Source: Mytilus trossulus (Eukaryota). From it: a stretch of DNA of 64,000 bases. The stretch spans positions 45,260,001 through 45,324,000 of the forward strand of contig NC_086375.1 in the NCBI RefSeq assembly GCF_036588685.1. Reading direction: 5' to 3'. How positions within the stretch are numbered: position 1 is the stretch's first letter; every line of letters begins with the position of its first letter. Below the pieces are notes generated by a model. That model saw nothing but the letters and a program-made list of their open reading frames with translations, ran no database searches and had not been told where the DNA came from. Below, in pieces: positions 8,479 to 62,118 of this stretch. A program made the position numbers and the translations under genes.

Positions 8479-8525
8479 TTAAACAATCTTTGCCTCCATT
8501 ATTTCAGCCAAAGACTCTGTTTCAT
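8479..8525 (-). CDS. TIR-STING coding exon 11, terminal (DETESLAEIMEAKIV*)
   Basis: tttcag acceptor, correct phase, homologous to exon 6, TAA at 8481-8479. Confidence 0.82.
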
Positions 8526-10573
8526 CTGAAACATCAAAATAAAGGTACATTTGAGTTTATTCAAGGAAATAACTGAGGCTTCAAAAATATATGTTAATCC
8601 ATATGTTGTATTGTATATTGCATTTTTTTTTATTACATACTCAATTAATAAGTTTTCAAGGCTCAGATTTAAGTCCTATCCTCAATTTAAAAGTTATATA
8701 TAGATTTAAGTAGTTGGTATAAACAAATTAAAAGGTATACAAAAACATATTTAATACATTCTATTTCTGTTTGAACAATGATAAAGTAGGTCTTCTACAT
8801 TAAGCCTATACTTGGTCTTTATTTCCTCAATTTGCAATCCAGTTCTGCCATTAAACCTGTCTTAAATTTGGATAATAAAGTTGATTCTTCAGATAAACAT
8901 CACATATCAAACTTAAATTCTTATTATTTTGATAAATGAAATAGTTTCTCCTGTATTTTAAGTTTCTAACTCCCCAAAAAACATATCTCTTTTAAGCCAA
9001 AAGTCAATGGACAAAAACGGTTTTGCATTAAAATTAAACAAGAATGTGTCCCCAGTACACAGATATCCTCACTATCATTTTCTATGTTCAGTGGACCTTG
9101 AAAATGGGAAAAAAAATCTCTTATTTTGCAGTAAAATTTGAAAGATCATAGCATAGGGAACATGTGTACTAAGTTTTAGGTTGATTGGACTTCAGCTTCA
9201 TCAAAAACTACCTTGACCAAAAACTTTAACCTGAAGCGTGACGGATGAACAGACCAGAAAACATAATGCCCATAAATGAAGTATAAAAATATCAAAAGAC
9301 TGACTGTAAAACAGTGAACTTCTTATTTGTCAATTGTGCAAATCAATCTTACTGATATGTATAAAATGAATAGGAAAACTCACCATCAAAATAAACAAAT
9401 TCACAGCATTTGGCTTTTACAGGATCAGCTGACTCCATAAGATTCTTAACGATCTCATAAAAATTATATGCTTCTGATAAAATAGTGTCTGCAGTCACAC
9501 CTGCAATCCTCCATTCCTTCATCTCATGTAAACATGTAATAGGTGCAGCATATTGTCCAATAAAATATTTGTCCTGTAAAATATAATAAAATATTCGTAT
9601 ACTTAAACATGTGTATACCAACACTGAGAGAAAATGATTAAAGAAAATAAGAGGGAAAAAAAATAAATGCAAACAGCACTTTATAAATTTCATGCGACTG
9701 AAGATCTTTTCTGGATTGACCTTCATCTGGAATGATCAAAGTGGTGTTGTTTACAAAGGGAAAGAAGCATGGCATATGAGAATATGAATAAGTATGAAAA
9801 CAGACATACCGGCTGATCAGTAATTTTATATATTTGACAAGAAAATGGTCTGCTCCCACCAAAAGGATGAATATCAGGAGTAGTTGTAAAGTTAGAAATT
9901 CTGTCATTTTTGTCTTTCATCACACCTTTAGCATCACAACTCTTTGGTATAATTATAAACAGAGTTTCAGGACATTTATAATTGCTGATATCCATTTTTT
10001 TAAAAGACTGGTCAATATTTTTCAAAGCATCTGTAAAAAGAAGAAAATACTCAAAATCATCAAAGCATATCTTATCTGAAAATATGTATGTTCAACTTTC
10101 TCTATTTACTCTTATTTGAATTTGAAATAAGAAACACAAATGAAATGTGTTTTACATGTTAATGTCAAGGTAGATAAAAAGTTTTGAGTCAACCAAGAAC
10201 ATGTATAAAAGCCTTTGCATTAATCATAAGTCATACAAAGTGGGGACTACATGTACCACCCTTTAAATATACCAACAATACAATGAAATAAACAATAAAC
10301 AATAAAGTAAATATATTTATTCATAACAAAATATGCCACATGAACAATTTATCATGTCACTGCAAGCACTTGACAATTAATCTGACGGTCTTCATAAGAA
10401 AAATTCTGGCGTAAATTTTTTCCCTTTAAAATACAGAAAAAATACTTACATAAAGCGCACAAGAGTATAACACGCAGGGATAAAGACAAATAATCTCTCT
10501 TGTAAGATAAAAAATAAGATACAATCCATGAATATTCCTTTGTCATCAACAGTCACTCAGACTGACAAACTAT

Positions 10574-10632
<59 letters not shown>

Positions 10633-13600
10633 GTATATTAATGATCTTACCTGGTAGGATAATTCTTAGATAATTAACAACATAACCCCAGGCAAGTCCA
10701 TTGGCTACATCACCAGCAGGTAGTAACATTTCTGTTTTCAATGGAAAATCTTCTCCTAAAACAAAACCAATTGTTTACAGACCTATCAGAGTTATGTCCC
10801 TTTACAAATGGGAAAACAATCTGAAATACTTGTTTCTTTTCTTTAACTTTAGTTTGCCTCAACTAAATGGTATGAAAGTTTTACACAATGCTTTTTACCA
10901 CAAAACACAGATTAAGTTTGAAGTTTGGTGGCGTCACTTTTGTAAGACATAATAGTGTCCTGTGAAAAAGTGTCCACATGAACAGTTTTTCATTGAAGTT
11001 TGTAATTTGATAATGTCATGGAATGGTGTCCCTCTAAATCATTTCTGTCAGGACACTGTCAGGACATTGTCAGGACATCAGTGTAACCCATCACCACAAA
11101 ACAAATATCACGTTTGAAATTTAATGTCATCACTTTTACCATTCTAGAGTTAAGCTCCTTTATAAATGGAAACATATGTGAACTGTTTGTTTATATTCTC
11201 TGACTTTAGTTTGCCTAAACCAAATGTTATGTAACTTATACACAATTCAGAGATAAAGTTTGAAATTGGTGGCCTCCCTTTTATGTTCATGAGTTATGCC
11301 CCTTTACAAGTAAAACAAATAGGTATACAAATTACGTTTTTTCATTTATATAGTGTCCTGACCTTTTGATTTTTTATCATGACCTGATGAAGGATTATTA
11401 ACACTTTTAATATGTGTTGTTTGCACTGAAATTTGTGTTATACATTTATAACAAACAAAATAAACCAAAAAAAACAAACTAAAAAAAGGTTCTTTGATAA
11501 ATAACAGGCACTCACCACTGACAATATTGTGAAGACTTTTAAGATGAGATTTAGTTTGTTCATTAAAAGGTACATAAGTAACCCACTGTAGAGCATCAGG
11601 TATGTAGATATCATTCCGTCTATCTACCACAGGGATTACCCTTACCCTCCTTTTAAGGATACCATCATGGAGCGCAGCTAGTACCCTCAGTTGAAGCATC
11701 TTGTCCTTAACTGAATTCTTGGTCATCAGAAAAATGAACCATCTACAATTCTGCACAGCTTTAATAAGTGTATTAGACTTCACCTCTGGGTCATTTGGGC
11801 TGTCAGGATTTTTCAGGATACTGTGTATCCCCTTCTCTTCCAGATATTCAATAATTTCTTTAGCACTCTGTTTGTCTTCTTTGTCTTCAGAATGAGCTAT
11901 ATACACCTGATATTGGTATTTAAGTTCTGGTGTAGATTCCAAGTTTTCTAACTTAGGCCTGGTGATTGGGCTTTCCTGAAAATGATTAAGATATCCATAC
12001 TATCTATATGATGATTGTGGCCTTAGATGAAAGTGTTTTTAAATTATAGATACTGTACATTTTGAATTAAATCTTATAGAAATAGTAATAATGAAAGTAA
12101 AACACCATGGAACTAGAAACAACAAAAAGCCATCAGCCACAAAACATTTGTTCTCATCGCCTTATTTGATTCCACTTTGTATGAGCTATTGATGACTATT
12201 GCATTTCTTTTACAATTCAAATTAAGGTGTTAAAGGGGACAAAATCAAATTTTCAATCTGTTTACTGTGTCCTGTTCTATTATTGTGCCTGAACTTAGCT
12301 GTGTCAAGAACAATGGTGTGTATTTTTAGCCAAAATTCATAAATACCTAATCAATGTTTCAGTATGTTTGAGCAAGTAAACACTATTGTGCAGGGGAAAC
12401 AAGTTAAACTTTAATACAAACCTTTGGCATAACTTTTTCAGTTAATTGTAAATCTTGTTTTATTGCTTTTACTAAAACTTCAGACACTTTCTCAGTTTCA
12501 TCTGTAAAAAAAATTGATGATTTCATAATTATTTTTTTATGCCACATTACAGTTTACAAAACAAAAAATGTCTGTATTTTGCAGAGTCTGTTTAGACTGG
12601 TAAATTTAAGACAGGAGGTGATTTATATTAGGCAGGAATGGCTTGTTTTTTTATGTTGTATCACACACTAGATATATTGTAAATAGACACTTCATAGATG
12701 AAAAATATCTCTAGAAGTCTTTTGGTTATTTGTGTTACATGGGTTGCTGACTCATTTACAAAACTTTCCATTTTGAATTTTCCTTCCTCAGAGTTCAGTA
12801 TTTTTGTGATTTTACTTTTTACATATAACAAGTACCAGTACCACATATGATGCCAAGTCCCTTTTAATTTATATGATGTGCTCATCATGTATTATTACTA
12901 TTATCAATATCAAGACTACATTTTGTATTATAAATTTTCAATTTTTGTATATTACCATTGAAAAGAACAACTCTTGCTTTATTTCTAGATATATCAAAGT
13001 GGTTTATCACAGAGTTCATGGTATAGTAAAACCTTGCTAACTGTAACTTCTTGTCATCTATACTAAACTTTGCTAAATGGTGATCTTCCATTGCCTTCAT
13101 TGCTCCTATGGCACTTGGGTATTCACAAATACAGAAATATGTCTGAAAAGGTATTTGAAAAGCATGAATAAACACAATAAATCATATGAATAGTTCATTT
13201 CTTGTGAAACAATTATTCTCAAGATCTATAGAAAAAAAATTGTAGATTCTTAACCCTTCAGAAAACACTCAGACTATAATATTATAATATAACCACAATT
13301 TGAGAAATCTGAAAAATTGTTAAAATGCTCTGGTGGAGTGATGCCCCATTGGCATTCATATACTTATACCACATCTCTTTATCTTTAACTTATACTGATT
13401 TTTATAAAGTCATCTCTGCAATTGTGCATTGATTTTTTCAAATGGGTTAATAAATGAAAACGAAAACATTGGCAGGTTTTGCTAAATTCAACTACAATGT
13501 CTCATGCAAGTGCAAAATTATATATGCCCTTGTAAAAATTATTTGGACAGGAGCTCAAGGTTTCTAAACATAAACAATGAAATTATAACCAATACATGAT

Positions 13601-16600
13601 TTTCCAAAACTGGTGATATAGAAGGAAACAAACAACTATTAAAGCTCTTATAGATAGAGATTCAGATACCATACATATCTATTCACCTGATCACCATCAG
13701 TAATACTGTAAAGTTTGACAGCAAACTTTCTAACGTTTCCCCCTCTAATTGTATTGGAAAGTTCCAAATGTGTGATCAGTGTGATATTTTCATCTATTTT
13801 CGACAGATCAAAATGGCAAGTACATGATGTTGGTACCATTTCATAAAACTTTGTAGACACATGGTTCTGAAGGGAGTTTGATTGATACCAATCCGATTCT
13901 TTCAGTTTATTTTCCAAATCTGTAAAAAATAAACAAGTGATTAAACTGTACATGTCATATGCAGATAAATTTAAATCTTAAATAAATTATTCAAAGAAAA
14001 AATTGGTAAGACATGCTAAATAACCACAGATTTACAGTTGAAAAAAACTAAAATCAATAAACTGAATACAAGAACAAACTAGAGAATACTAAAAGATAAG
14101 CCATCATAGAGGGCCCCTAAGAAGTCCACAAATAACTTGTAATGTTTTTTTTTATCATAGCTCATAATAATGCAAAGCAGACATTCAAACCAAACAGCAA
14201 ATGGTTTTAATGCTAACATTTTGTTCATATGCACAGCAATGACTAAGTTGAACTAATGTTTTGTTCATGACTTTTTATGTTTTTTTTTTTTTTCCTTCCA
14301 CCTGACAGTCGAAAAAGTGGTGTGTACTCAGATGCACTTCTAGTAATTAACATCTTCAATGAAAAAAGATGAAAACAAGAATGTGTCCCCAGTACACAGA
14401 TGCCCCACTCGCACTATCATTTTCTATATTCAGTGGACCATGAAATTGGGGTCAGAACTCTAATATGATAAAATTAGAAAGATCATATCATAAGGAACAT
14501 GTATATTAAGTTTTAGGTTGATTGGACTTCAAGTTCATCAAAAACTACCTCGACCAAAAACTTTAACCTGAAGTGGGACGAACAGACGGACGAAACAAAA
14601 GGATGGACAAACAAACGCACAGACCAGAAAACATAATGCCAATAAATGGGGCATAAAAATAATATTAAAAAAGTATACCTGGTAGAATGTATTGAAGTAA
14701 TCCTGCATAATGTGACCATACCAGACCATGAGCTACATTTCCTGCAGGCATCAATTGTCTTATAGTCTCTTTTTCTGAAATAGGAAATAGCACATTTTTT
14801 ATACACAGATTTCTTAATCACTGTCTGTTCTGTCAAAAATTGCGAAACAAGGTTTACTATTTTAACCATAAAATAGAAGTATCAATATGTACTTAGGCTA
14901 GCTTAACTTTTACTTCTCATTTAAAAATATTTTGAAGTAAAATGGAAACAATTACAGCAATAGTACCCGTTTCTTTTTATGTTATGTCTAAGCTAAAAAG
15001 GTAAAGACACTATCAGCACTCTTGGTTACAATCCCAAGCCCATTTTTATTTGGTGATGGAAGTTGGAAGGTTCAGAGAGTTCATTGAAATTTGACGGGAA
15101 AACTAGTAAGCCTTGTCAATTAAAATCTGAGTCGAATACACATTGCCAAATGTTGGGTTTCAAGTTCTGTTGTTGCCATGTTGTTTTAGTTTTAATGCAT
15201 GTTTTTTATACACCTAGGTAATTTCACAAGGGGGCAGTTTTTGTCAACCCTAGTTCCCTACAGGCATGTGTATACATCTAAATGGTTTTAAAATAAATGT
15301 CCATCAAATGCTCATGTGGTTTTTAAAAAGTTAAAGACAGGAATGAATCCAGCAATTTTAAAAAGTAGATTTTGCAAAATTACATGGGGATAATGGAGAA
15401 GACTGCCTGAATCTTATTTTTGCAAATTTCTTAAGCTGTTAAAATGTTATTTTCTCAGTGGTGTTCAGTAAAGTTGTTTTCCATTTCATTGTCTTTCAAT
15501 TTTTTTGTCATGGCATTGTTATTTTCTCTTAAACGAGATTTTAATATCCCCTTGGCATCTTTCACCTCTTTTTCTGTATGACATACATCTACATGTATGA
15601 TAAAAGGAGATGAGGGATATGTGTCAATAAAACAACAATCCAACAAGATTAAGATTTTTTTTCTTTGCGTTGTTTATATGGATTTTTAATTTTGCAAACT
15701 GTCTACACTTACAAGTACTGTAAATTGTGTCTTTTGTATAAACTAAATCAATATACCTCTTATCCTTTCAATGGTTTCAGTTACCCAAGAATCATTTTCT
15801 TTTGTAAACACAATTTTTCTAGCTTCTTGTAATACTGCAATTTGTGGAATCTATAAACATGATAAAGAAAATAAAAAATATTAACTATGACAATTATATA
15901 ATGACCTGTCACCAAGAAACTAACAGAGTACATTTGCGTAAGTTGGTTTTATATGACGAGGACATAATTTTTCAATCAGTTAAAGGTGGTACCTAACACT
16001 ACAGGGAGATAACTCTGTAAAATCAGCTAAACATTTTAACTACGTTGTGTTGTTAAGGGAATAGTAAGCTTCTCAATGATCACAATCAGTGTTTGTCAAA
16101 CTGCTATATAACCAGTGTCATTTTTCTGATAAAATGTTTGGTTCAAATTTTTTGAAAGTTTTATATTTTTGTCAAATGGTCAAAGTAAATACTTTGTCAA
16201 AATTTTATGAAAATTAAACGAGCCAAATTAATTTTAGTCAAAGTGTTAGGTATCACCTTAATTGAGTTCTGGAGCTGGCATTTCAGTAACTGCTAGTAGT
16301 CCTTTGTTTATGTATGTATCATTTTCATTGTGCTTAGTTTCTTTTGTTGCCTGTTTTGAAATCAAACTCTTCTTTTAAACTGCATTTTACTGTGCTTATT
16401 TCTGTGTGTTTATTTATTCTTAGTACATTTGCTAGAGGTATAGGGAGAGGGTTGAGATCTCACCAAACATATTTACCTTAACCTCGCCACAATTTTGTGC
16501 CTGTCCCAAGTCAGAAGCCTCTGGACTTTGATGGTTTTGTATGTTTTTAAATTATAGTTTATTTATATGTTAAAGAGTTTAGTATGACGATCATTTTCAC

Positions 16601-17526
16601 TGAACTAGTACACATTTTTATTTAGGGGTTAGCTGAGGTTCACCTATGGATGTGGGATTTTCTTGCTGAATTGGAGATCCATTGGTGGCCTTCAGCTGTT
16701 ATCTGCTATTTGGTCAGGTTGTTGTCTTTTTGACAAATTCTCCATTTCCATTTCCATTTTATTTAAAGTAATGTGCTTGTCTCATGTGCATCTTATGGCT
16801 GGGCTCTAGTCCTAGCCAGGTCAAAGGCTTGAAAATTAGACTTTGATGCTTCCCTGTTAAGCAAATGTCTGAACTTATGAGTTAAAACATCCATGGTCAG
16901 CTCAGAGTTTAAATAAAGAATTTGTACCATCATGATTTTAATCATGTCATCTTTTATAAAAAAAAAAATAGAATGAATTGGTGCGAACTTATCTTAATTT
17001 TTGAAAATGTTTAAGATCCTGAAAAATCCATGATCTTAGATTTAAGATTATTCAGATTTATAAGGAACATTGTTATCTTTTCTTCAATACACAAAATATG
17101 CCTGTGCCACACAATTTTGTATAGTAAGTATCAAGAATTTTTATTCCATCTGAATAAATGAAGGGTTGAGTTAAGTGTTAAAAATACAACAACAAAACAA
17201 ATACATACATCTTTCTCTTCTATACCATGTAGTAAAAGAACTACTGAAAGCTGCTGCTTCCTTTGTGATCTCTCTAGACCTATTAGTAGTTCTAGATTGC
17301 ACCAGCTACTTTGCATGGCATTCTTAGTGATGAATAGAAGTGTCTTATCAACTTTATCCACCAATTCTGTTAAACTAGACAGAAAAATTTGTCCTGGTTG
17401 TAATTCATCTTGGGTAAGGATGCTTATGTCTTTAAACACTTCCAATTTTGGAAGGATTTCATCAAATACCAGTTGTTGATCATCAAGTTCATTACTGTGA
17501 GAAAGGAATACTTTTATGGTAGTCAT
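8479..17526 (-). CDS. STING1: Tandem TIR-STING-TIR-STING protein (soluble STING-family cyclic dinucleotide receptor), 11 coding exons, 2031 nt, 676 aa
   Basis: Manual splicing: 17526-17209, 15850-15757, 14774-14679, 13919-13687, 13142-12956, 12501-12422, 11975-11516, 10755-10651, 10030-9810, 9573-9384, 8525-8479. All introns are GT-AG with compatible phases and there are no internal stops. STING signatures occur twice: GNVAHGLVWSHYAGLLQYILP and GDVANGLAWGYVVNYLRIILP (human [20 protein letters not shown]); CEYPSAI and GQYAAPI (human LEYATPL). Two TIR domains begin VFLSHS and VYIAHS. The symbol indicates family, not proven orthology. Confidence 0.92.
9038..9290 (+). mobile_element. HINE/pearl-like non-autonomous element (intronic)
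   Basis: AACAAGAATGTGTCCCCAGTACAC start, GACG-type microsatellite, 3' hairpin remnant; paralogous to 14375-14659. Confidence 0.7.
9384..9573 (-). CDS. TIR-STING coding exon 10: STING domain 2 (DKYFIGQYAAPITCLHEM...CCEFVYFD)
   Basis: QYAAPITCLHEM corresponds to human EYATPLQTLFAM; tttacag and GTGAGT splice sites. Confidence 0.9.
9810..10030 (-). CDS. TIR-STING coding exon 9: STING domain 2 core and lid (DALKNIDQ...LFIIIPKSC...FGGSRPFSCQIYKITDQP)
   Basis: LFIIIPKSC corresponds to human LYILLPLDC; ttttacag and GTATGT splice sites. Confidence 0.9.
10576..10629. repeat. (TC)27 microsatellite about 20 nt from the exon 8 donor
   Basis: Perfect dinucleotide run. Confidence 0.98.
10651..10755 (-). 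CDS. TIR-STING coding exon 8: STING domain 2 dimerisation helix (EDFPLKTEMLLPAGDVANGLAWGYVVNYLRIILP)
   Basis: STING signature; ttttag and GTAAGA splice sites; absent from the ORF track on this strand. Confidence 0.93.
11516..11975 (-). CDS. TIR-STING coding exon 7: linker and TIR domain 2
   Basis: YQVYIAHSEDKEDK...AVQNCRWFIFLMTKNS...RVIPV...IPDALQWVTYVPF TIR pattern; ttttcag and GTGAGT splice sites. Confidence 0.9.
12422..12501 (-). CDS. TIR-STING coding exon 6: last helix of STING domain 1 and linker (DETEKVSEVLVKAIKQDLQLTEKVMPK)
   Basis: ttttacag and GTTTGT splice sites, phase 1->0; resembles human SLSQEVLRHLRQE; paralogous to exon 11 (DETESLAEI). Confidence 0.85.
12956..13142 (-). CDS. 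TIR-STING coding exon 5: STING domain 1 (TYFCICEYPSAI...LQLARFYYTMNSVI...KARVVLFN)
   Basis: Aligns to human CVLEYATPL...[21 protein letters not shown]...CRLIAY; canonical splice sites. Confidence 0.9.
13687..13919 (-). CDS. TIR-STING coding exon 4: STING domain 1 core and lid (DLENKLKES...IRGGNVRKFAVKLYSITDGDQ)
   Basis: Aligns by eye to human VSQRLYILLPLDC...DPNI...RAGIKDRVYSNSIYEL; ttttacag and GTGAAT splice sites. Confidence 0.9.
14375..14659 (+). mobile_element. HINE/pearl-like non-autonomous element (intronic)
   Basis: Same family as 9038-9290; GACG/GACA repeats; ends ATGCC...GGGCATAAAAA. Confidence 0.7.
14679..14774 (-). CDS. TIR-STING coding exon 3: STING domain 1 dimerisation helix (KETIRQLMPAGNVAHGLVWSHYAGLLQYILP)
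   Basis: Close match to the STING [11 protein letters not shown] motif; tttcag and GTATAC splice sites. Confidence 0.93.
15757..15850 (-). CDS. TIR-STING coding exon 2: end of TIR1 (IPQIAVLQEARKIVFTKENDSWVTETIERIR)
   Basis: tttatag acceptor, GTATAT donor; phase 0->1 bridges exons 1 and 3; resembles the TIR C-terminal region. Confidence 0.85.
15985..16257. mobile_element. MITE in a TIR-STING intron
   Basis: TIRs GGTGGTACCTAACAC / GTGTTAGGTATCACC in a T(T/A)AA context. Confidence 0.75.
16470..16762 (+). repeat. Interspersed repeat; other copies at ~17950-18205 and ~41120-41280
   Basis: Shared cctgtcccaa...cactgaactagtacaca...tctctttgacacattccccatttccatt. Confidence 0.75.
17209..17526 (-). 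CDS. TIR-STING coding exon 1: TIR domain 1 (MTTIKVFLSHS...SSWCNLEL...GIEEKD)
   Basis: TIR box1 VFLSHS, BB-loop-like DELQPG, WCxxEL; acceptor tttcag at 17535-17534 just upstream of the ATG, donor GTATGT at 17208. Confidence 0.9.
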
Positions 17527-43601: not shown

Positions 43602-44843
43602 ATGGGCTCTCTGTTATCAAAAGGAAGCACTATTACAAAGGACAAGTATGAGAAGACGAAAGAACAAGAACCAAACATATCAATAAAGGTTAGCGAGTTT
43701 ATTGCAAAGATAATAGCAACACCACCTTTAAAATTGAAACTGATTGACATTTACCATGGGATATATGAACGATTATGTGGACCCTGGGGAAGAGTGACTG
43801 GCAGCTATGCTGATAGTCTTTCTATGTCCACATCAGATGTTGATATAATATTGGATAACATATCTGTTAATTCAAGCCCTGAAATGACAATGAACAATTC
43901 GTGTACCATGGAACTAGTTATTTTTACAGAGGATAATGCTATACCACCGGGATGCTGTTGGCTACGAGCCTACCAAAAAGTTGCTTTCATGGGAAAATAT
44001 GTGCCGTCAGATTCAACTTCTTTTCCTTTTGTAAGGGTAAATGGACTGACTAAACACGTTACAGATGCTGAATGGAATCTTGTAGATATCAAAGGATACA
44101 AATGCTTGTCTTGCCGAAATATTAATGAACAGAGGGCGAAGAGTGGTTTAACTTCCTTCCCTTTTATTAATCGATTCCTGCCACACTGGATACCACATGG
44201 ACCAGCATTTAAACAGACATATTTTTGGATATTTGATGTTGATATCGTGGATGCTTTCAAATGTAAAACACTACCTCCAGTGTTACAAAAATGGGCAAAA
44301 CGAACACGAAAAACATGGCCATCACAAAGCACTATAGAAAAAGCTTTAGAACAAGGTTGTCATGTAATGAGTCTGCCTTCAAAAATTTCTTCTGATGAAT
44401 TTACAGAGGTTGAGTTTAGACTCGGTTATGGGGCCATGGAAAAGATTCTAACAGAATCTCTTAGTGACTGTCAAAAACAATGTTATATCCTACTTAAGAT
44501 AATACTAAAAGAATACATAGAACCACGATTCCCTGGTGAAGATATTGTATCGTCGTATGTCATGAAGATGTTGATATTCTGGATGTCAGAGGAAACAGAT
44601 TTAGATACTTGGCGTCCAGAGTGTCTTCTTGAATGCTTGGAGATGTGTCTAGGAAGGCTGTTTGATTGGATTGAATATGGTTATTGTCCGAACTTCTTTA
44701 TTCCCGAATATAACATATTTCGCACAAAACTTACAAGTATACACTCTAATAATTTTATCTGTTTGATGAGGGAAATCATGGATTTAAAATGGAAGGTATT
44801 GCTTCATTGTAAAACAATGCAATGGGTGAATGTATACGTATAG
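43602..44843 (+). CDS. cGAS-like receptor (cGLR, Mab-21 family nucleotidyltransferase), 413 aa, single coding exon; C-terminus possibly truncated
   Basis: NTase motif TG67S68-x10-D79VD81; HGPA followed by third acidic residue D214 (DVDIVDAF); Mab-21 C-lobe motifs WPS...GCHV, FRLGYGAMEK, CYILLK, SSYVMKMLIFW, CPNFFIPEYNIF; acceptor tttacag at 43594. Confidence 0.9.
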   Translation: MGSLLSKGSTITKDKYEKTKEQEPNISIKVSEFIAKIIATPPLKLKLIDIYHGIYERLCGPWGRVTGSYADSLSMSTSDVDIILDNISVNSSPEMTMNNSCTMELVIFTEDNAIPPGCCWLRAYQKVAFMGKYVPSDSTSFPFVRVNGLTKHVTDAEWNLVDIKGYKCLSCRNINEQRAKSGLTSFPFINRFLPHWIPHGPAFKQTYFWIFDVDIVDAFKCKTLPPVLQKWAKRTRKTWPSQSTIEKALEQGCHVMSLPSKISSDEFTEVEFRLGYGAMEKILTESLSDCQKQCYILLKIILKEYIEPRFPGEDIVSSYVMKMLIFWMSEETDLDTWRPECLLECLEMCLGRLFDWIEYGYCPNFFIPEYNIFRTKLTSIHSNNFICLMREIMDLKWKVLLHCKTMQWVNVYV

Positions 44844-49374: not shown

Positions 49375-49398
49375 GTTACTTAGTAAACAAAAAGAACA

Positions 49399-51421
49399 AT
49401 GCGGATAACTGCAATTATTAATCATTTACTTGTATCAACTTTCTTATGTGTCAAGACAGATTCCGATGTGGCCTTGTCTTATGTGTGTACATTCAATATA
49501 CATTGCCGCTGCTATAATAAAGTAGGAACAGAAAACTTTCCACCGAATACTTACATTTTAAATCTGCAAAATAACCGTATACGCGTAATAAGCGATACCG
49601 CATTTCATTCTTTATCGAATCTGTCAATCTTGGATTTATCATACAACAAAATCAAAGGTATAAAGTTACACTCTTTTGGTGGATTAGGAAAACTGAAGGA
49701 GTTAAACTTGAATTACAATCCTTTAGATTATACAAAATTTCCAAACGAAGGTTTCATCCCATTGGTATCCCTTCGACGTCTTTGCATTAAAAGTAAAATT
49801 TTCATGGCAGCTGTTAGTTCTATTTTCTCAGATAAAACGATATCACATTTGAAGTCACTGGAGAAGTTGGAAATAGATGTTCTGATCAATGCACAAATCT
49901 TCGAGTATATGCCACTTTTAACACGTATTTCATTTGACGAAAAGTGTAAGATTCATATCACACCTGGTGGACATCGAAGTTTGAAAAACATCAAAGAATT
50001 TTACGTTCATCGTTTAGTTGACACGCTACTTCCATATCTTAATAACTTTACAAATGAATTGAGGCTGACTCCAGTCGAAACATTGTCATTTCAAAACACT
50101 TTTGCAGAGGGTTTTGAAGACCGTTACTATCCATGGAATCCGATAAGCAGAAATTTGCAGAACTCGTCTTTAAAAGAACTGCTGATGACTGAAAATAAAC
50201 TTGGAGAAAGTTTTCCAGTATCTAAACTCGATCCTCCTCCTTCAAGTTTACAAGTGCTGAAACTTTCCAGCAATATACTCGAAAAGTTTTCGTTAGATTT
50301 AGGGAATATTCGAAATCTCAGTCTACAAAATAATTATCTAGGAGGATTTCTAAGTACTCATAGTTATAAAATGTCGAAAGAATCTAGCAGTCTTGAGTAC
50401 ATAGATTTATCAGCGAATAGTATTGAAATGCTTACATTCATATTATTTAAGGGCCAACCAAAATTAAAATATATCAATCTTAGTCATAATAAGTTGCAAA
50501 AGATTACATTTGATGTTTCTCGATTGAATGATCTTCATTATTTAGATTTATCAAGAAACAATTTCACGACATTAGACGAAAAGGCTATGGCAATGTTCGA
50601 TGGTCTGTCTAAAAGTACTTTTTTTACACTTAATTTACAAAATAATGCAATGCAATGTACCTGTAACACACTGCCGTTCTTAAAGTGGATTTCAAAAACG
50701 AAAGTTGATTTGCTGCTTAACGAAAAGTGTAATTTAGAAGATGGGACCGTTGTAAGTTTCAATCCAATAGATCCAATAATACAGCAACTACAGAAAAAAT
50801 GCAGTACATATACGTACTTAATAATTGCTTTGTCTGTAGGGTTGGTTGTTATCTTAACCATTCTTTTTTTTTGCTTTAGTGTATAAATACAGATGGAAAC
50901 TTCGATACATGTTTTATCTTGCAAAAAGTAAACACTACAATTACAAGGCTTCCATAGACAACGGGGAATACACTTACGATGCTTTTATCTCGTACTGTGA
51001 TGATGATAGAACATTTGTATTAAAAGATTGCATTGCAAATTTAGAAACTGAAGGGAACGCTAAATTATGCGTGCACCAACGAGATTTCCTACCAGGCCAA
51101 GAGATAACAGTCAATATTACAAACGCCATCCATGAAAGCAGAAAGACAGTTTGCATTATAACGAGAAAGTTTTTTGAGTCTTATTACTGTATGTTTGAAT
51201 TTAATATGGCCCGGATGGAAAACATTTATTCTCGGGATGGAAGAAATATCATTTTCCTAGTATTTCTCAAGCAAATTCAACCAAAAGAAATGCCACTTAT
51301 GATGCTCGAACTTATAGAGAAACAGTCTTACATTGAATATCCAAATGACGAAAAAGGGAATGTTGTGTTCTGGGAAAAAATAAAAGAAGCTATTCATTCA
51401 CGACATTTGTTGCAAAACTGA
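49399..51421 (+). pseudogene. Toll-like receptor copy A; one +1 frameshift in a T9 run (50864-50872) within the TM helix; 673 aa if corrected (may be an assembly error)
   Basis: Signal peptide, LRRs, LRRCT (NAMQCTC) and TM in 49399-50886; TIR (YDAFISY, RDFLPG, FW) in the next frame 50879-51421. Removing one T restores colinearity with copy C. Confidence 0.88.
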
Positions 51422-57486: not shown

Positions 57487-59144
57487 ATGCTAATAATTGT
57501 ACTGGTTAATTTTTTATTTGTGTCTACTTTCCTAAGTGAGAGGATGAATGCTGATTCAAAATTCTCCTCAGTGTGTATTTTCAATACAAGGTGCCGGTGT
57601 TTTAATGAGACAGGAACATCAAAATTACATGTGAATTGCGCACACAGTATGGTTAAGAAAATTCCAGAAGTTCCACGAAATGTTTTTAATTTTAATCTCC
57701 AACATAACATTATCAGGAAAATAGAGGACAACGTATTTCAAAATTTAACGACACTATATCCTTATTGGATTTATCACATAATGAAATTATCAGTTTGAAA
57801 TCAAACTCTTTTGAGGGATTGGGAGAACTAGAAGAGTTAAACTTAAATGACAACCCAATACAATATACAGATTTTCCAAATGGAACGTTTATCCCGTTAG
57901 TATCTCTCAAACGTCTTTACATTAAACGTACATTTCAAGCTATGAATAGACATAGAAACATGTTTTCAGATAAAACAATGTCAGATTTGAAAACATTGGA
58001 GAAATTGGAAATAGACATTCGTGCAAAATCAAAAAAAGACATTATGTTTGGAGAAGGATATAAATATTTAATTAATCTTAGTTCTCTCAATATTGGCTTA
58101 TGTTATATTCAAGTTTTTGTTGATAGAAAAATCTTCCAGTTTATGCCTCTTTTGACAAATATTTCTTTTGACATGCATTGTCGAATGTCTATTTTCCCCG
58201 GAGGGCATCAAAGTCTACAAAGCGTAAGACAACTTTACGTTCACCATTTAATTTCCGTACAAAATTTATCATATTTTAATAGTTTTACAAACGAATTAAA
58301 ACGGACACCCATTGAAACATTGACCTTTCAAAAGACTTTTCCAAATAGTTTGGATTACTTCCCTTGGAACCCAATTAGTGAAAGTTTCTACAACTCGTCT
58401 CTAAAAAAATTACGAATGACCGGTAATAAACTTTATGAAAGCTTTTCATCGTCTAAACTTAATGCTCCTCCTTCTAGCTTACAAGAACTGAATCTTTCCA
58501 GTAATAGACTTTACATGTTTGTGTTAGATTTAGGGAATATTCGAAAGCTAAATCTACAAAAGAACCTTCTTGGAGCATTTTTAAGTTCTCATAGATATAA
58601 AAGGTCAAGGACAATTAACAGCAAACTTGAATATATAGATTTGTCGATGAATCATATTGAAAAACTTACATTTCGAATATTTCAGGGACAACCAAATTTA
58701 AAATATATCAACCTTAGTCGTAACAAGTTGCAAAAGATGACATTTCGAGTTTCTCGATTGCATTATCTTCGTTATTTAAATTTATCAACAAACAATTTTA
58801 CGACATTAGACAAAAATGCTATGGAAAATTTCGATGTTCTATCTAAAAAAACGTCCTTCATAGTAAATTTACGAAACAATGCATTGCACTGTACATGTAA
58901 AACATTGCCATTCCTAAAGTGGACCACCAAAACAAAAGTTGATGTACTGATTAACGATAATTGTACTTTAGGAGATGGGACGATCGTGAGTTTCAGCTCA
59001 ATAGACTCAATAATACAGCAACTACAGAAAGGATGTACGACATATACATCCTTAATTATTGGTTTGACTACGGTCTTGGCAGTCATTTTGGCCGTTGTAG
59101 TGTTTGCTTTAGTATATAAATACAGATGGATAGAAATGTTGTGA
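57487..59144 (+). pseudogene. Toll-like receptor copy B; frameshift near 57757 and TIR domain lost after YKYRW
   Basis: ATG at 57487 in the same context as the paralogues (acaaaggacaATG); apparent 2-bp insertion (cta-TA-tcc-tta-ttg); LRR, LRRCT and TM in 57765-59144; homology ends at 59130, where a dispersed repeat follows. Confidence 0.88.
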
Positions 59145-59147
59145 ATA

Positions 59148-59232
59148 GTTCGTTTGATGTGTTTGAGCTTTTATTTTGTCAATTGTTAAGGGACTTTCCG
59201 TTTTGAATTTTCCTCGGAGTTTGGTATTTTTT
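59148..59232 (+). repeat. Short dispersed repeat carrying GGGACTTTCC; copies at ~8040-8135, 12760-12820, 31555-31665(-), 31803-31861, 32520-32600(-), 35810-35915, 43150-43235
   Basis: Shared tttgatgtgtttgagcttt...ggactttcc.ttttgaattttcctcggagtt. Confidence 0.8.
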
Positions 59233-59533
59233 CGATTGGAGACTGTTAAACGCATTGCTTTCAGTAATATTCTATATAAAAACTAGCAGTATACCAAAAC
59301 CACTCTAAATACTACTCAGGCATGCATCGGGAAGATATACATAATATTTTATGCACCCTTTGTTATGATTTATTGACTTTGAAGGTCTGAATATTTATAT
59401 GTTAAATAGTTGCCAATTTAATTTGAAAATTTGAAAAAAAAACTATCAAATGATATACAGACAGGATATTCAGGTTTTTAAACATTTTAAGCAAAATAAT
59501 TTCCTCTTTGTGATGAATGAATATGACGTAAAA

Positions 59534-59945
59534 ACAGGAAGTATCACGAGACTGACTTGATTACTAGTATATAATTTTCAGTTTCAGAAAACATCCTTCA
59601 ACCAATCTAAATCATTCAGTACAAGGAAAGTAAGTTAAATATTTTTTTAATACAATCATAATAAACAAATAAAATACAAAATGCCTTGTAAAATTGAGAT
59701 TGAAACGGCTATCTGGAATAGATTACTGCTTTCTACGTCTATTTTTTTTTGTTTGTTTTTTGGGGTTTTTTTTTTAGTAGTGAAAACGAAAAATTAACAT
59801 GTTTCGATATTGATTTTTGATTTCATAATACAATACAAAAAACAAGTCTCTTTTTGATTACTTTGTGAATATGGAAATATTAGTAGTTTTCTATTATTGT
59901 TGCATTTAAATAAACATTTATATGAAAAAGGTTTATATTTTACAG
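59534..59945 (+). promoter_or_regulatory. Putative TLR-C promoter, non-coding exon and 5'UTR intron
   Basis: ACAGGAAGT 59534-59542, donor GTAAGT 59630, acceptor ending 59945; upstream flank similar to ~56420-56620. Confidence 0.55.
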
Positions 59946-59967
59946 GTCCCTTAACCAACAAAGGACA

Positions 59968-62118
59968 ATGCTGATAAATGCAATTGTTAATTTTCTATTT
60001 GTGTCAACTTGCCTTAGTGTTAAAATGGATGCCGATTTAAAATTATCCTCCGTGTGTATTTTTAATACTCAGTGCCGGTGCTCAAATGCGACAGGAACAT
60101 CGCAATTACATGTTGATTGTGCGAACGGTAAACTAACAGAAATTCCCAAAGTTCCACGAAATGTTTACATTTTAAACCTGCAACATAACTGTATATTGGA
60201 AATAGAGGACAACGTATTTCAAAGTTTAACGAATCTATACATGTTGGATTTATCAGATAATAAGATTAATCTTTTGAAATTACACTCTTTTAAGGGATTG
60301 AGAGAACTCAAAGTATTAAACTTAAATGACAATCCAATAGCGTATGAAATGTTTCCAAACGGTGTTTTTATCCCGTTAGTCTCTCTTAAACATCTGTGCA
60401 TTAAAAGTACAACTAAAAAGGTTAGTAAAAGTACAAAAGTGATCTCGGATCAAGCAATATCAGACTTGAAGACATTGGAGAAATTGGAATTAGACGTTCC
60501 TATACAATCCGCCACACATATTATATTTGGAGACGGATATAAATATTTAAAGCATCTTATTTCTCTCAATATCGGAAGATGTTATTATCCAGTATACATT
60601 GATGAAAAAACTTTCCAGTTTCTTCCACATTTGACAAACATTTCTTTTGACAATCAGTGTGATATGTTTATCATCTCGGGTGGACACCAAAGTCTACAAA
60701 GCACAAGACAACTTTACGTGCACCGTTTAGTAAACAATTTGGTACAAGATTTACTACAGTTTGATAGTCTGACAAAGGAGCTGAAACTGACACCAATAGA
60801 AACTTTGTCATTTGAAAACACCTTTTCGTGTAGTTTTGAATATTATCCATGGAATCCAATAAGTTTAAATTTAAACATCTCGTCTCTAAAGAATCTGAGA
60901 ATGACCGACAATAGACTTGGTGAAAGCTTTCCACCGTCTAAACTTTATCCACCTCCTCCAAGTTTACAAGAACTGAATCTTTCCAGTAATAAACTCGAGA
61001 AGTTTGCGTTAGATTTAGAGAATATTCGAAATCTAAGTCTACAAAATAATTATCTAGGAAGATTTCTAAGTACTCGCAGTTATAAAATGTCAAAACAATC
61101 TAGCAGGCTAGAGTTCATAGATTTGTCGATGAATGGTATTGAAAATCTAACATTTGTATTATTCAAGGGACAGCCAAATTTAAAATATATCAATCTGAAT
61201 GATAACAAGCTGCAAAAGGTTACTTTTGATGTTTCTCAATTGAAAAGTCTTCGGTATTTGGATTTATCAAGCAATAATTTTACGACATTAGACGAGAAAG
61301 CTATGGCAATGTTCGATGGCCTGTCTAAAATTACCCATTTCACAGTTAATTTACAAAAAAATGCATTGCGATGTACCTGCAACACACTGCCGTTTTTAAA
61401 GTGGATTTTCAAAACGAAAGTTGATTTGCTGCTTAACGAAAAGTGTAATTTAGAAGATGGGACTGGTTTTAGTTTCTACCCAATAAACTCATTAATACAG
61501 CAAGTACAGAATGGATGTACGTCATATACAACCTTAGTCATAGCGTTGTCTGTAGGCTTGGCAGTCATGTTGACCGTTATTGTTTTGGCTTTAGTGTATA
61601 AATACAGATGGAAACTTCGATACATGTTTTACCTTGCCAAAAGGAAACACTACAATTACAAGGCTTCCATAGACAACGGGGAATACACGTACGATGCTTT
61701 TATCTCGTATTGTGATGATGATAGAGCATTTGTATTACAAGATTGCATTGCAAACTTAGAAACTGAAGGGAATGCTAAATTATGCGTGCACCAACGAGAC
61801 TTCCTACCAGGCCAAGAGATAACAGTCAATATTACAAACGCTATACATGACAGCAGAAAGACGGTTTGCATAATAACAAGAAAGTTTTTTGAGTCTTACT
61901 ATTGTATGTTTGAATTCAACATGGCCCGAATGGAAAACATTTATTCTCGGGATGGACGAAATATTATTTTTCTAGTATTTCTAGAGCAAATTCAACCAAA
62001 AGAAATGCCACTTATGATGCTTGAACTTATAGAGAAACAGTCTTACATCGAATATCCCAATGACGAAGAAGGAAATATTGTGTTCTGGGATAAAATTCAA
62101 GAAGCTATTCATTCATGA
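59968..62118 (+). CDS. Toll-like receptor copy C, intact, 716 aa (single-cysteine-cluster type)
   Basis: Signal peptide, LRRNT (C-x5-CRC...C), LxxLxLxxN repeats, LRRCT NALRCTC, TM LVIALSVGLAVMLTVIVLALVY, TIR with box1 YDAFISY, BB loop RDFLPG and box3 FW. Confidence 0.96.
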   Translation: MLINAIVNFLFVSTCLSVKMDADLKLSSVCIFNTQCRCSNATGTSQLHVDCANGKLTEIPKVPRNVYILNLQHNCILEIEDNVFQSLTNLYMLDLSDNKINLLKLHSFKGLRELKVLNLNDNPIAYEMFPNGVFIPLVSLKHLCIKSTTKKVSKSTKVISDQAISDLKTLEKLELDVPIQSATHIIFGDGYKYLKHLISLNIGRCYYPVYIDEKTFQFLPHLTNISFDNQCDMFIISGGHQSLQSTRQLYVHRLVNNLVQDLLQFDSLTKELKLTPIETLSFENTFSCSFEYYPWNPISLNLNISSLKNLRMTDNRLGESFPPSKLYPPPPSLQELNLSSNKLEKFALDLENIRNLSLQNNYLGRFLSTRSYKMSKQSSRLEFIDLSMNGIENLTFVLFKGQPNLKYINLNDNKLQKVTFDVSQLKSLRYLDLSSNNFTTLDEKAMAMFDGLSKITHFTVNLQKNALRCTCNTLPFLKWIFKTKVDLLLNEKCNLEDGTGFSFYPINSLIQQVQNGCTSYTTLVIALSVGLAVMLTVIVLALVYKYRWKLRYMFYLAKRKHYNYKASIDNGEYTYDAFISYCDDDRAFVLQDCIANLETEGNAKLCVHQRDFLPGQEITVNITNAIHDSRKTVCIITRKFFESYYCMFEFNMARMENIYSRDGRNIIFLVFLEQIQPKEMPLMMLELIEKQSYIEYPNDEEGNIVFWDKIQEAIHS

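What the first reader, a model, noticed from the sequence alone, without database searches (positions are those of the whole stretch)
9384..14774. Complementary degeneration of the two STING pockets suggests an asymmetric ligand
By-eye alignment to human STING. Domain 1 (WSHYAGLL, IRGGNVRKF, EYPS) keeps S162, G166, R232, R238 and E260 but has Y163->H and loses the base-stacking Y167 (->L). Domain 2 (WGYVVNYL, PFGGSRPF, QYAA) keeps Y163, Y167 and R238 but has S162->G, G166->N, no R232, E260->Q and T263->A. Each half keeps roughly what the other lost. Inference: a hetero-pocket freed from two-fold symmetry could read an asymmetric signal such as a purine-pyrimidine or mixed-linkage cyclic dinucleotide, product types known from invertebrate cGLRs.
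Basis: partly seen in the sequence, partly recalled or inferred. Interest (0 to 1): 0.82.

Follow-up and report, generated by a model that had tools for sequence, protein, structure and literature searches.

The report
Mussel tandem STING with asymmetric pocket

Summary
On the minus strand, window 17526-8479, lies an intact 11-exon Mytilus gene. It encodes 676 aa and every intron is GT-AG. The domain order is TIR-STING(D1)-TIR-STING(D2). All six quoted motifs are present, and their human-STING numbering holds in HMMER and MAFFT alignments.

The word "degeneration" is wrong. Across tandem proteins from six bivalve orders the split is fixed. D1 keeps S162, G166, R232, R238 and E260, but has H163 and P262. 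D2 keeps Y163, Y167 and R238, but has N166 in every sequence tabulated, no R232, Q260 and A263. Single-domain STINGs, from molluscs to mammals, keep the complete canonical set. D1 and D2 evolve at equal rates, and D2 forms one 100/100 clade. The Y167-to-L change in D1 is lineage-specific.

The hetero-pocket reading is plausible but only indirectly supported. AlphaFold2 gives compact models (pTM 0.69 and 0.75). The diverged positions include 162 and 263, which set linkage preference in coral STINGs. The complex prediction gave no answer, and the ligand is unknown. Symmetric human STING already binds 2'3'-cUA.

The architecture is known. I found no description of the conserved D1/D2 pocket partition in the papers searched. 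A divergent cGLR gene 30 kb away was co-duplicated with the STING gene.

The parts
17209..17526 (-). Exon 1: start codon and first part of TIR domain 1
   Evidence: Pfam TIR_2 at 1.8e-9. tblastn to P0045 gives 99% identity. GT donor.
15757..15850 (-). Exon 2: rest of TIR domain 1
   Evidence: tblastn to P0045 gives 100% identity. AG/GT splice sites.
14679..14774 (-). Exon 3: start of STING domain 1 (helix alpha-1). Carries WSHYAGLL at 14718-14695.
   Evidence: Pfam PF15009, profile positions 1-22. Motif coordinates and AG/GT.
13687..13919 (-). Exon 4: middle of STING domain 1, including the lid. Carries IRGGNVRKF at 13749-13723.
   Evidence: Pfam PF15009 at 31.1 bits. The translation is identical to P0045.
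12956..13142 (-). Exon 5: pocket strand and helix alpha-3 of STING domain 1. Carries EYPS at 13124-13113.
   Evidence: Pfam PF15009 at 28.7 bits.
12422..12501 (-). Exon 6: C-terminal helix of STING domain 1
   Evidence: Matches DETEKVSEVLVKAIKQDLQLTEKVMPK of P0045. AG/GT.
11516..11975 (-). Exon 7: linker and the whole of TIR domain 2
   Evidence: Pfam TIR_2 at 1.2e-10. 99% identity to P0045.
10651..10755 (-). Exon 8: start of STING domain 2. Carries WGYVVNYL at 10690-10667.
   Evidence: Pfam PF15009, profile positions 1-21.
9810..10030 (-). Exon 9: middle of STING domain 2 with a shortened lid. Carries PFGGSRPF at 9866-9843.
   Evidence: Pfam PF15009 at 3.6e-4.
9384..9573 (-). Exon 10: pocket strand and helix alpha-3 of STING domain 2. 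Carries QYAA at 9555-9544.
   Evidence: Pfam PF15009 at 6.4e-3.
8479..8525 (-). Exon 11: last 15 codons (DETESLAEIMEAKIV) and the stop codon
   Evidence: Motif search and AG acceptor. With this exon the exon lengths sum to 2031 nt, which is 676 aa.

Best explanation
The locus is an intact Mytilus gene for a soluble 676-aa receptor with no transmembrane exon. Its domain order is TIR1-STING(D1)-TIR2-STING(D2). It belongs to a bivalve-wide family created by an ancient tandem duplication of a TIR-STING unit.

Shown: the two STING domains have been different from each other since before the bivalve orders sampled here diverged. Both are under similar constraint. Between them they split the canonical cyclic-dinucleotide contact set.
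- The D1 half carries S162, G166, R232, R238, E260 and S263.
- The D2 half carries Y163, Y167 and R238, plus a new invariant N166. It has a shortened lid without R232, and Q260 and A263.

Inferred: D1 and D2 pair with each other inside one chain, through the conserved alpha-1/alpha-3 dimer surface. This would make one pseudo-two-fold, oriented pocket. One half would supply phosphate and ribose-hydroxyl contacts (R232, S162, S263, E260). The other would supply the aromatic stacking platform (Y167, Y163) and an Asn that projects into the pocket floor. Ligand binding would close the lids, reposition or oligomerise the two TIR domains, and start TIR-adaptor signalling.

Speculative: the ligand is a single asymmetric cGLR product bound in one orientation. 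The divergent cGLR 30 kb away is a candidate source.
For: Gene model:
- Eleven open exons, all introns GT-AG, 2031 nt in total.
- The exons are close to M. trossulus P0045, and the D1 exons translate identically.
- The orthologue cluster holds full-length proteins from transcript-sized Logan contigs, such as P0019 on a 2452-nt contig.

Domains: Pfam TIR and STING_LBD hits exon by exon, and two STING stretches in family members.

Conserved partition: residue tables over 35 and then 113 domains.
- N166 and Y167 are invariant in D2.
- H163 and P262 are nearly invariant in D1.
- R232 and E260 are kept in D1 only.
- All 11 single-domain STINGs are canonical.

Tree: the bivalve D2 domains form a 100/100 clade. 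D1 groups with molluscan single TIR-STINGs. The D1 and D2 subtrees mirror each other.

Equal rates: Mytilus versus Crassostrea identity is 0.38 for D1 and 0.35 for D2. Mean column conservation is 0.546 versus 0.523.

Pocket enrichment of the D1/D2 fixed differences: p = 0.0012.

Dimer surface retained in both domains: G158, L159, W161, L168, L172 and M271.

AlphaFold2: pTM is 0.69 for P0045 and 0.75 for C. gigas P0014. That is above the roughly 0.5 I estimate as the ceiling if the two halves were placed independently. This estimate is my inference.

Fold: the model matches ligand-bound STING structures at TM 0.87-0.89.

Literature:
- Positions 162 and 263 set linkage preference (PMC9980059).
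- Position 166 lies in the ligand pocket, and G166E is thought to mimic a phosphate (PMC9343627).

Other: a scallop protein has four STING domains alternating D1, D2, D1, D2.
Against: - No contact map or PAE was available, so D1:D2 pairing in the AlphaFold2 models is not seen directly.
- The only complex test gave no answer, and D2 folded poorly there without an alignment.
- D1 on its own keeps most canonical residues and could homodimerise between chains.
- Symmetric human STING binds the asymmetric 2'3'-cGAMP and 2'3'-cUA (PDB 8gjx), so asymmetry is not needed to read such ligands.
- Y167 in D1 is L, Y or F among paralogues, so part of the complementarity is lineage-specific.
- No binding, expression or signalling data exist for this protein.
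Confidence: 0.5

Rival explanations
1. D1 is the only ligand-binding domain and works as a D1:D1 homodimer between two chains, like single oyster TIR-STING. D2 is a ligand-blind STING-like module kept for scaffolding, autoinhibition or oligomerisation.
For: - D1 groups with single TIR-STINGs.
- D1 keeps S162, G166, R232, R238 and E260.
- D2 sits on a long stem branch.
- D2 has lost R232, E260 and T263 and has a shorter lid.
Against: - D2 keeps Y167 in every tandem protein tabulated and Y163 in all 17 of the diverse set.
- D2 keeps R238 in 15 of 17 diverse members. Y167 and R238 are described as the universally conserved ligand contacts (PMC9980059).
- D2's new N166 lies in the pocket floor (PMC9343627) and is invariant, which points to selection on the pocket.
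- D1 itself lacks Y167 in this orthogroup and in oysters, so a D1:D1 pocket would have no stacking tyrosine.
Confidence: 0.2
2. Two chains form a parallel dimer with two separate homodimeric pockets, D1:D1 and D2:D2. Each reads a different cyclic dinucleotide, so one receptor integrates two cGLR signals.
For: - Both domains keep the dimer-surface residues.
- Both are equally constrained.
- The genome holds hundreds of cGLR-like loci: 579 first-look candidates for the Mab-21_C domain and 567 for this cGLR protein. Many distinct signals are therefore plausible.
Against: - In all single-domain STINGs position 166 is Gly. Two Asn166 facing one pocket floor in a D2:D2 dimer is likely to crowd it. 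This is an inference from PMC9343627, not a computation.
- A D2:D2 pocket would lack R232, E260 and T263 on both sides.
- Covalent linkage favours intramolecular pairing.
- The high pTM of the monomer models suggests the chain satisfies its own interfaces.
Confidence: 0.15
3. The differences are neutral decay of a redundant duplicate, and the gene or one of its domains is on the way to being a pseudogene.
For: D2 exons score below the Pfam cut-off individually.
Against: - The reading frame is intact with canonical splice sites.
- The same substitutions are fixed across six bivalve orders.
- D2 is as conserved as D1.
- The orthologue cluster includes full-length proteins from transcript-sized Logan contigs.
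Confidence: 0.02

Closest known systems
Crassostrea gigas TIR-STING (PDB 6WT6 apo, 6WT7 with 2'3'-cGAMP)
   Same: It is a soluble metazoan protein with an N-terminal animal-type TIR fused to a STING ligand-binding domain. It is the best PDB sequence match (2.2e-29) and the best fold match. D1 groups with molluscan single TIR-STINGs of this kind in the tree (P0018, P0087).
   Different: The oyster protein has one TIR-STING unit and forms a symmetric homodimer. In the printed alignment it keeps Y163, G166, Y167, R232, R238 and E260, with G at 162 and G at 263. The window gene has two units in one chain, and neither STING domain keeps the full contact set.
Vertebrate STING (human TMEM173, for example PDB 4KSY and 8GJX)
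   Same: The ligand-binding fold is the same (TM 0.87-0.89). The alpha-1 dimer helix with G158 and W161 is shared, as is the lid arginine R238.
   Different: Here there is no four-helix transmembrane domain and no C-terminal tail. TIR domains take their place. Human STING is a symmetric homodimer that nevertheless binds the asymmetric 2'3'-cGAMP and 2'3'-cUA.
Coral Stylophora pistillata STING paralogues Sp-STING1 and Sp-STING3 (Li et al., PMC9980059)
   Same: Ligand preference there is tuned by substitutions at the pocket floor, at the positions equivalent to human S162 and T263. The same positions differ between D1 (S, S) and D2 (G, A).
   Different: In coral the variants are separate genes, each forming a symmetric homodimer. 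Here two variants are fused in one polypeptide and probably face one another.
Bacterial CBASS TIR-STING (Sphingobacterium faecium SfSTING)
   Same: The TIR-then-STING order is shared. A nucleotidyltransferase gene lies nearby in the genome (operon in bacteria, 30 kb here). Activation by oligomerisation is the expected logic.
   Different: The bacterial STING domain belongs to a different Pfam family, PF20300. Relatives here give only weak, sub-threshold hits to it. The bacterial TIR is a filament-activated NADase. The TIRs here look like animal TLR-type TIRs, and published analysis finds the oyster fusion to be convergent (PMC10732462).

Membership tests
STING ligand-binding domain (Pfam PF15009) | Profile match above the curated cut-off of 27 bits | tested here: met
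   D1 exons score 31.1 and 28.7 bits on their own. D2 exons score 16-20 bits singly. Whole family members score 111-304 bits with two or more matched stretches.
STING ligand-binding domain (Pfam PF15009) | STING alpha/beta fold | tested here: met
   The AlphaFold2 model of P0045 has pLDDT of roughly 85-94 over most of both domains. Foldseek gives TM 0.87-0.89 and rmsd about 2 A to human, anemone and duck STING structures. The tool does not say which of the two domains was aligned.
STING ligand-binding domain (Pfam PF15009) | Universally conserved ligand contacts: the stacking Tyr (human Y167) and the lid Arg (R238), as named in PMC9980059 | tested here: inconclusive
   D2 has both. D1 has R238 but Leu at 167 in this gene; other paralogues have Y or F. 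No single domain carries the full canonical set, but the pair does.
Metazoan TIR-STING fusion (oyster type, PDB 6WT6) | TIR domain directly N-terminal to a metazoan-type STING domain, with no transmembrane segment | tested here: met
   The TIR_2/TIR exons at 17526-15757 and 11975-11516 each precede a STING domain. The protein starts in TIR1. 6wt6 is the top PDB sequence hit.
Bivalve tandem TIR-STING-TIR-STING family | Four domains in the order TIR-STING-TIR-STING in one reading frame or transcript | tested here: met
   The exon chain is in phase. It is colinear with the 676-aa P0045 and with transcript-derived P0019. An architecture of two STING and two TIR domains is reported for oyster in PMC11103948.
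Bivalve tandem TIR-STING-TIR-STING family | D1 signature W-S-H-Y-x-G and E-x-P. D2 signature W-x-Y-V-x-N-Y-L and Q-Y-A-A. This signature is defined here. | tested here: met
   The window has WSHYAG / EYP in D1 and WGYVVNYL / QYAA in D2.
Canonical transmembrane STING (vertebrate or insect type) | N-terminal four-helix transmembrane domain (Pfam PF23417) | tested here: not met
   The N-terminus is a TIR domain. Precomputed Pfam domains listed for the tandem relatives are TIR and STING families, never PF23417. The vertebrate and hemichordate singles do carry PF23417.
Bacterial CBASS TIR-STING | Prokaryotic STING domain (PF20300) fused to a NADase TIR | tested here: not met
   Only sub-threshold PF20300 hits appear in some relatives. 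The STING domains group with animal STINGs. NADase activity is not testable with these tools.

The most novel reading that the evidence does not exclude
Bivalves have evolved a single-chain, pseudo-heterodimeric STING. Its oriented pocket would bind one specific asymmetric cyclic dinucleotide in a fixed orientation, for example a purine-pyrimidine or mixed-linkage product. In Mytilus that signal would be made by the divergent cGLR lying 30 kb away, which was co-duplicated with the receptor gene. That would make an animal synthase-receptor gene pair analogous to a bacterial CBASS operon.
Probability: 0.2. Interest if true: 0.85.

Novelty: new variant of a known kind. Interest (0 to 1): 0.62.

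Why it matters
Every STING studied structurally so far is a symmetric homodimer. Ligand preference is tuned by changing both halves of the pocket at once. A receptor that fuses two different halves would break that constraint. It could recognise base identity, linkage and orientation of a cyclic dinucleotide separately on each side.

Bivalve genomes hold hundreds of cGLR synthases. This genome gave 579 first-look candidate loci. Some bivalve cGLRs are known to make 2'3'-cUA. How receptors keep such signals apart is an open question.

The conserved D1/D2 signature defined here gives a concrete handle on it. Specific residues can be mutated: N166, H163, R232, Q260 and 263. A nearby candidate synthase can be tested. 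Natural paralogue arrays differ at pocket positions 165, 167 and the lid.

Tried and rejected
- Complex prediction on D1 (P0045 residues 143-335) with D2 (497-676) returned 'no answer'. It used ESMFold2 without alignments, scored 0.00, and the partner's own fold was uncertain. This is evidence neither for nor against binding.
Expression and splice junctions of this exact gene were not checked. Full-length orthologues from transcript-sized Logan contigs stand in for that.
The origin of the metagenomic tandem protein P0017 could not be examined, nor could synteny of the cGLR with STING in other Mytilus genomes.
- Exons were searched by reference, one at a time. The database proteins P0045, P0019 and P0014 served as full-length proxies.
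- PDB sequence search with the D2 middle exon alone found no STING. D2 needed family alignments to be placed.
- Literature searches for 'two STING domains', 'tandem STING' and similar terms found only a passing mention of the architecture. The Morehouse 2020 Nature paper is not held.
- The pseudogene or neutral-decay reading is rejected on frame integrity and conservation.
- Membership in the bacterial-type TIR-STING family and in the canonical transmembrane STING family is rejected (see the membership tests).
Full report
**What is there**

The window is a stretch of a 1.3-Gb Mytilus genome, G000:C3:45260001-45324000. The finding lies in a minus-strand gene. Stop-to-stop frames and Pfam scans show eight coding blocks in the order TIR, three STING_LBD pieces, TIR, three STING_LBD pieces.

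Database proteins served as guides: P0045 from M. trossulus (676 aa), and P0019, a 677-aa protein from a 2452-nt Logan contig. With them I placed eleven exons:
- 17526-17209
- 15850-15757
- 14774-14679
- 13919-13687
- 13142-12956
- 12501-12422
- 11975-11516
- 10755-10651
- 10030-9810
- 9573-9384
- 8525-8479

Every intron is GT-AG. The phases fit, and the lengths sum to 2031 nt, which is 676 codons plus a stop. The two halves share intron positions and phases, so the gene arose by tandem duplication of a TIR-STING unit.

Exons were searched by reference. P0045, P0019 and P0014 served as full-length proxies. The window's D1 exons translate identically to P0045, and the rest differs by a few residues.

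**The observation**

This includes the one-residue gap that keeps both R232 and R238.

For D2 I aligned 113 STING domains, including two 379-aa mammalian STINGs whose motifs sit at the human numbers. D2 reads G162, Y163, V164, N166, Y167, a two-residue lid deletion that removes position 232, R238, Q260 and A263.

Three additions apply. D1 also carries P262, S263 and A264. D2 carries V164. The gene has two TIR domains and extends beyond the stated range.

**Is it more than chance?**

A profile-free search of 1.8 billion representatives with one D1 exon found tandem proteins. A word search and a cluster look-up then named their sources:
- Five Mytilus species, each with several paralogues
- Crassostrea and Saccostrea
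- Ylistrum, a scallop, with a four-STING protein
- Tegillarca
- Sinanodonta
- Mercenaria

In all of them the same split holds.
- D1 reads W-S-H163-Y-x-G166-(Y/F/L)167, with R232, R238 and E260-x-P262.
- D2 reads W-x-Y163-V-x-N166-Y167-L, with no R232, R238 kept, and Q260-Y-A-A263-P.

N166 and Y167 in D2 are invariant. Eleven single-domain STINGs are fully canonical at every one of these positions. They come from Pinctada, Mizuhopecten, a hemichordate, lampreys, mammals and unnamed sources.

In a maximum-likelihood tree the bivalve D2 domains form one 100/100 clade on a long stem. D1 groups with molluscan single TIR-STINGs, and the two subtrees mirror each other. The duplication therefore predates the split of the bivalve orders sampled.

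D1 and D2 are equally conserved. Mytilus versus Crassostrea identity is 0.38 for D1 and 0.35 for D2, and mean column conservation is 0.546 versus 0.523.

Ten columns are conserved in both domains but carry different residues: 163, 166, 200, 257, 260, 262, 264, 287, 309 and 310. Four of them fall among eleven a-priori ligand-contact positions out of 184 (p = 0.0012).

Two of the listed items are lineage-specific. D1 position 167 is L in this orthogroup and in oysters, but Y or F elsewhere. D2 position 162 varies (G, T, N, A or S).

**How it probably works**

Both domains keep the STING dimer-surface residues G158, L159, W161, L168, L172 and M271.

AlphaFold2 with a 37-sequence alignment gives P0045 a pLDDT of 78 and a pTM of 0.69. 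It gives the 33%-identical C. gigas member P0014 a pTM of 0.75. If the two TIR-STING halves were placed independently, I would expect a pTM ceiling near 0.5. That estimate is my inference. The models therefore appear to be confident compact assemblies. The tool returns no contacts, so D1:D2 pairing is inferred and not seen.

The model matches ligand-bound STING structures at TM 0.87-0.89.

Published work bears on the diverged positions.
- In coral STINGs the residues equivalent to S162 and T263 decide 2'3' versus 3'3' linkage preference. Y167 and R238 are the universal contacts (PMC9980059).
- Position 166 lies in the ligand pocket, and G166E is thought to mimic a ligand phosphate and engage R238 (PMC9343627).

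The window protein has S162 and S263 in D1. It has G162, A263 and N166 in D2.

The most economical reading is one intramolecular pocket whose two halves do different jobs. D1 would supply phosphate, ribose and base-edge contacts. D2 would supply the stacking platform and an Asn in the pocket floor. Lid closure would be relayed to the two TIR domains.

TIR1 keeps the animal TIR 'SSWCxLE' motif with its glutamate. By my eye alignment TIR2 does not (one search lists S73, W75 and E79 as nearly invariant). The TIRs may therefore be asymmetric too. That step is inference.

**Against**

- The complex test gave no answer.
- D1 alone might homodimerise.
- Symmetric human STING already binds 2'3'-cUA (8gjx).
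- Nothing is known of the ligand.

**Comparison with what is known**

The gene is a member of the metazoan TIR-STING kind (oyster 6WT6 and 6WT7). More precisely, it belongs to the bivalve tandem form. The existence of that form is mentioned in passing for oyster in PMC11103948.

It is not a canonical transmembrane STING, and it is not a bacterial TIR-STING.

In the papers I could search, I found no description of the conserved D1/D2 pocket partition, or of an intramolecular asymmetric STING pocket. Subscription-journal papers are largely outside that library.

I rate the finding a new variant of a known kind.

**Context**

Thirty kilobases away, at 43602-44840 on the plus strand, lies an intronless 413-aa Mab-21/cGLR reading frame. 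It has a complete GS...DVD...D triad by eye.

Its only close paralogue is 96% identical. That paralogue lies about 30 kb from the paralogous tandem-STING gene, 110 kb upstream. All other matches listed are at most 40% identical and cover only the C-terminal half (567 first-look candidates, 101 scored).

Receptor and synthase were therefore co-duplicated as one segment. Because this is a single duplication event, it counts as one observation of linkage, not two.

I confirmed the cGLR and the TLR-like reading frames.

**Verdict**

Interest is 0.62.

Noticed in passing
window 43602-44840 (+): This is an intronless 413-aa cGAS-like receptor (Mab-21) reading frame, with Pfam PF03281 and PF20266 hits. 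Its best PDB match is 'cGAS-like receptor 1', 8gjy. By eye it has a complete GS..(12)..DVD plus FDVD catalytic triad. Its N-terminal half is not recognised by the Pfam profile. Its only close paralogue is 96% identical, at G000:C3:45192900-45194138. That paralogue sits about 30 kb from the paralogous tandem-STING gene at C3:45161405-45164060, so synthase and receptor were co-duplicated as one segment. All other matches listed in the genome are at most 40% identical.
   Followed up: partly
window 49387-51418 (+) and 57708-62115 (+): These are Toll-like-receptor-type reading frames. One is a 730-aa LRR+TIR frame at 59926-62115. One is an LRR-only frame at 57708-59141. A third pair has the LRR (49387-50883) and the TIR (50858-51418) in different frames, which may reflect a frameshift, an intron or a broken copy.
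   Followed up: partly
G000:C3:45161405-45164060, C3:45249652-45249765, C3:71766199-71774656, C3:83402499-83402699, C14:38498273-38498368 (L001-L009): The genome holds further STING loci. Two more tandem-type genes lie within 120 kb upstream of this one. One has identical D1 motifs, and one has WSHYSGYL. The loci at 71.77 Mb and 83.40 Mb carry D2-type helices with F at position 163 (WGFFVNYL, WGFVVNYL), and one of them has a canonical E-F-A-T-P strand.
   Followed up: partly
proteins P0086 / P0015 (M. californianus, M. coruscus); own-genome locus L003 (C14:38498273): This is a variant architecture. The first TIR is replaced by an N-terminal hydrophobic stretch (GAINIIVSITAIGAFAKVISEGF), followed by D1-type STING, TIR and D2-type STING. 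It may be a membrane-anchored tandem STING. No transmembrane prediction was run.
   Followed up: no
protein P0006 (Ylistrum balloti, 1422 aa): This protein has four STING domains alternating D1, D2, D1, D2 types, with three TIR matches. It is either a doubled tandem receptor or two adjacent genes merged by annotation. Either way the D1-D2 pair is the repeated unit.
   Followed up: no
protein P0017 (JGI metagenome contig, 732 aa): This is a tandem STING protein without Pfam-detectable TIR domains. D1 is fully canonical. D2 has N166 and no R232 but keeps E260 and T263. Its D2 does not fall in the bivalve D2 clade (long branch). It may be an early or independent case of the same asymmetry.
   Followed up: partly
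window 9179-9322 (-) and 14516-14881 (-): Two introns of the gene carry the same repeat-derived open frame, ending ...FRLKFLV(K/E)VVFDE(A/L)EVQST. A (GA)n-type microsatellite lies at about 10572-10673. These are probably interspersed repeats.
   Followed up: no
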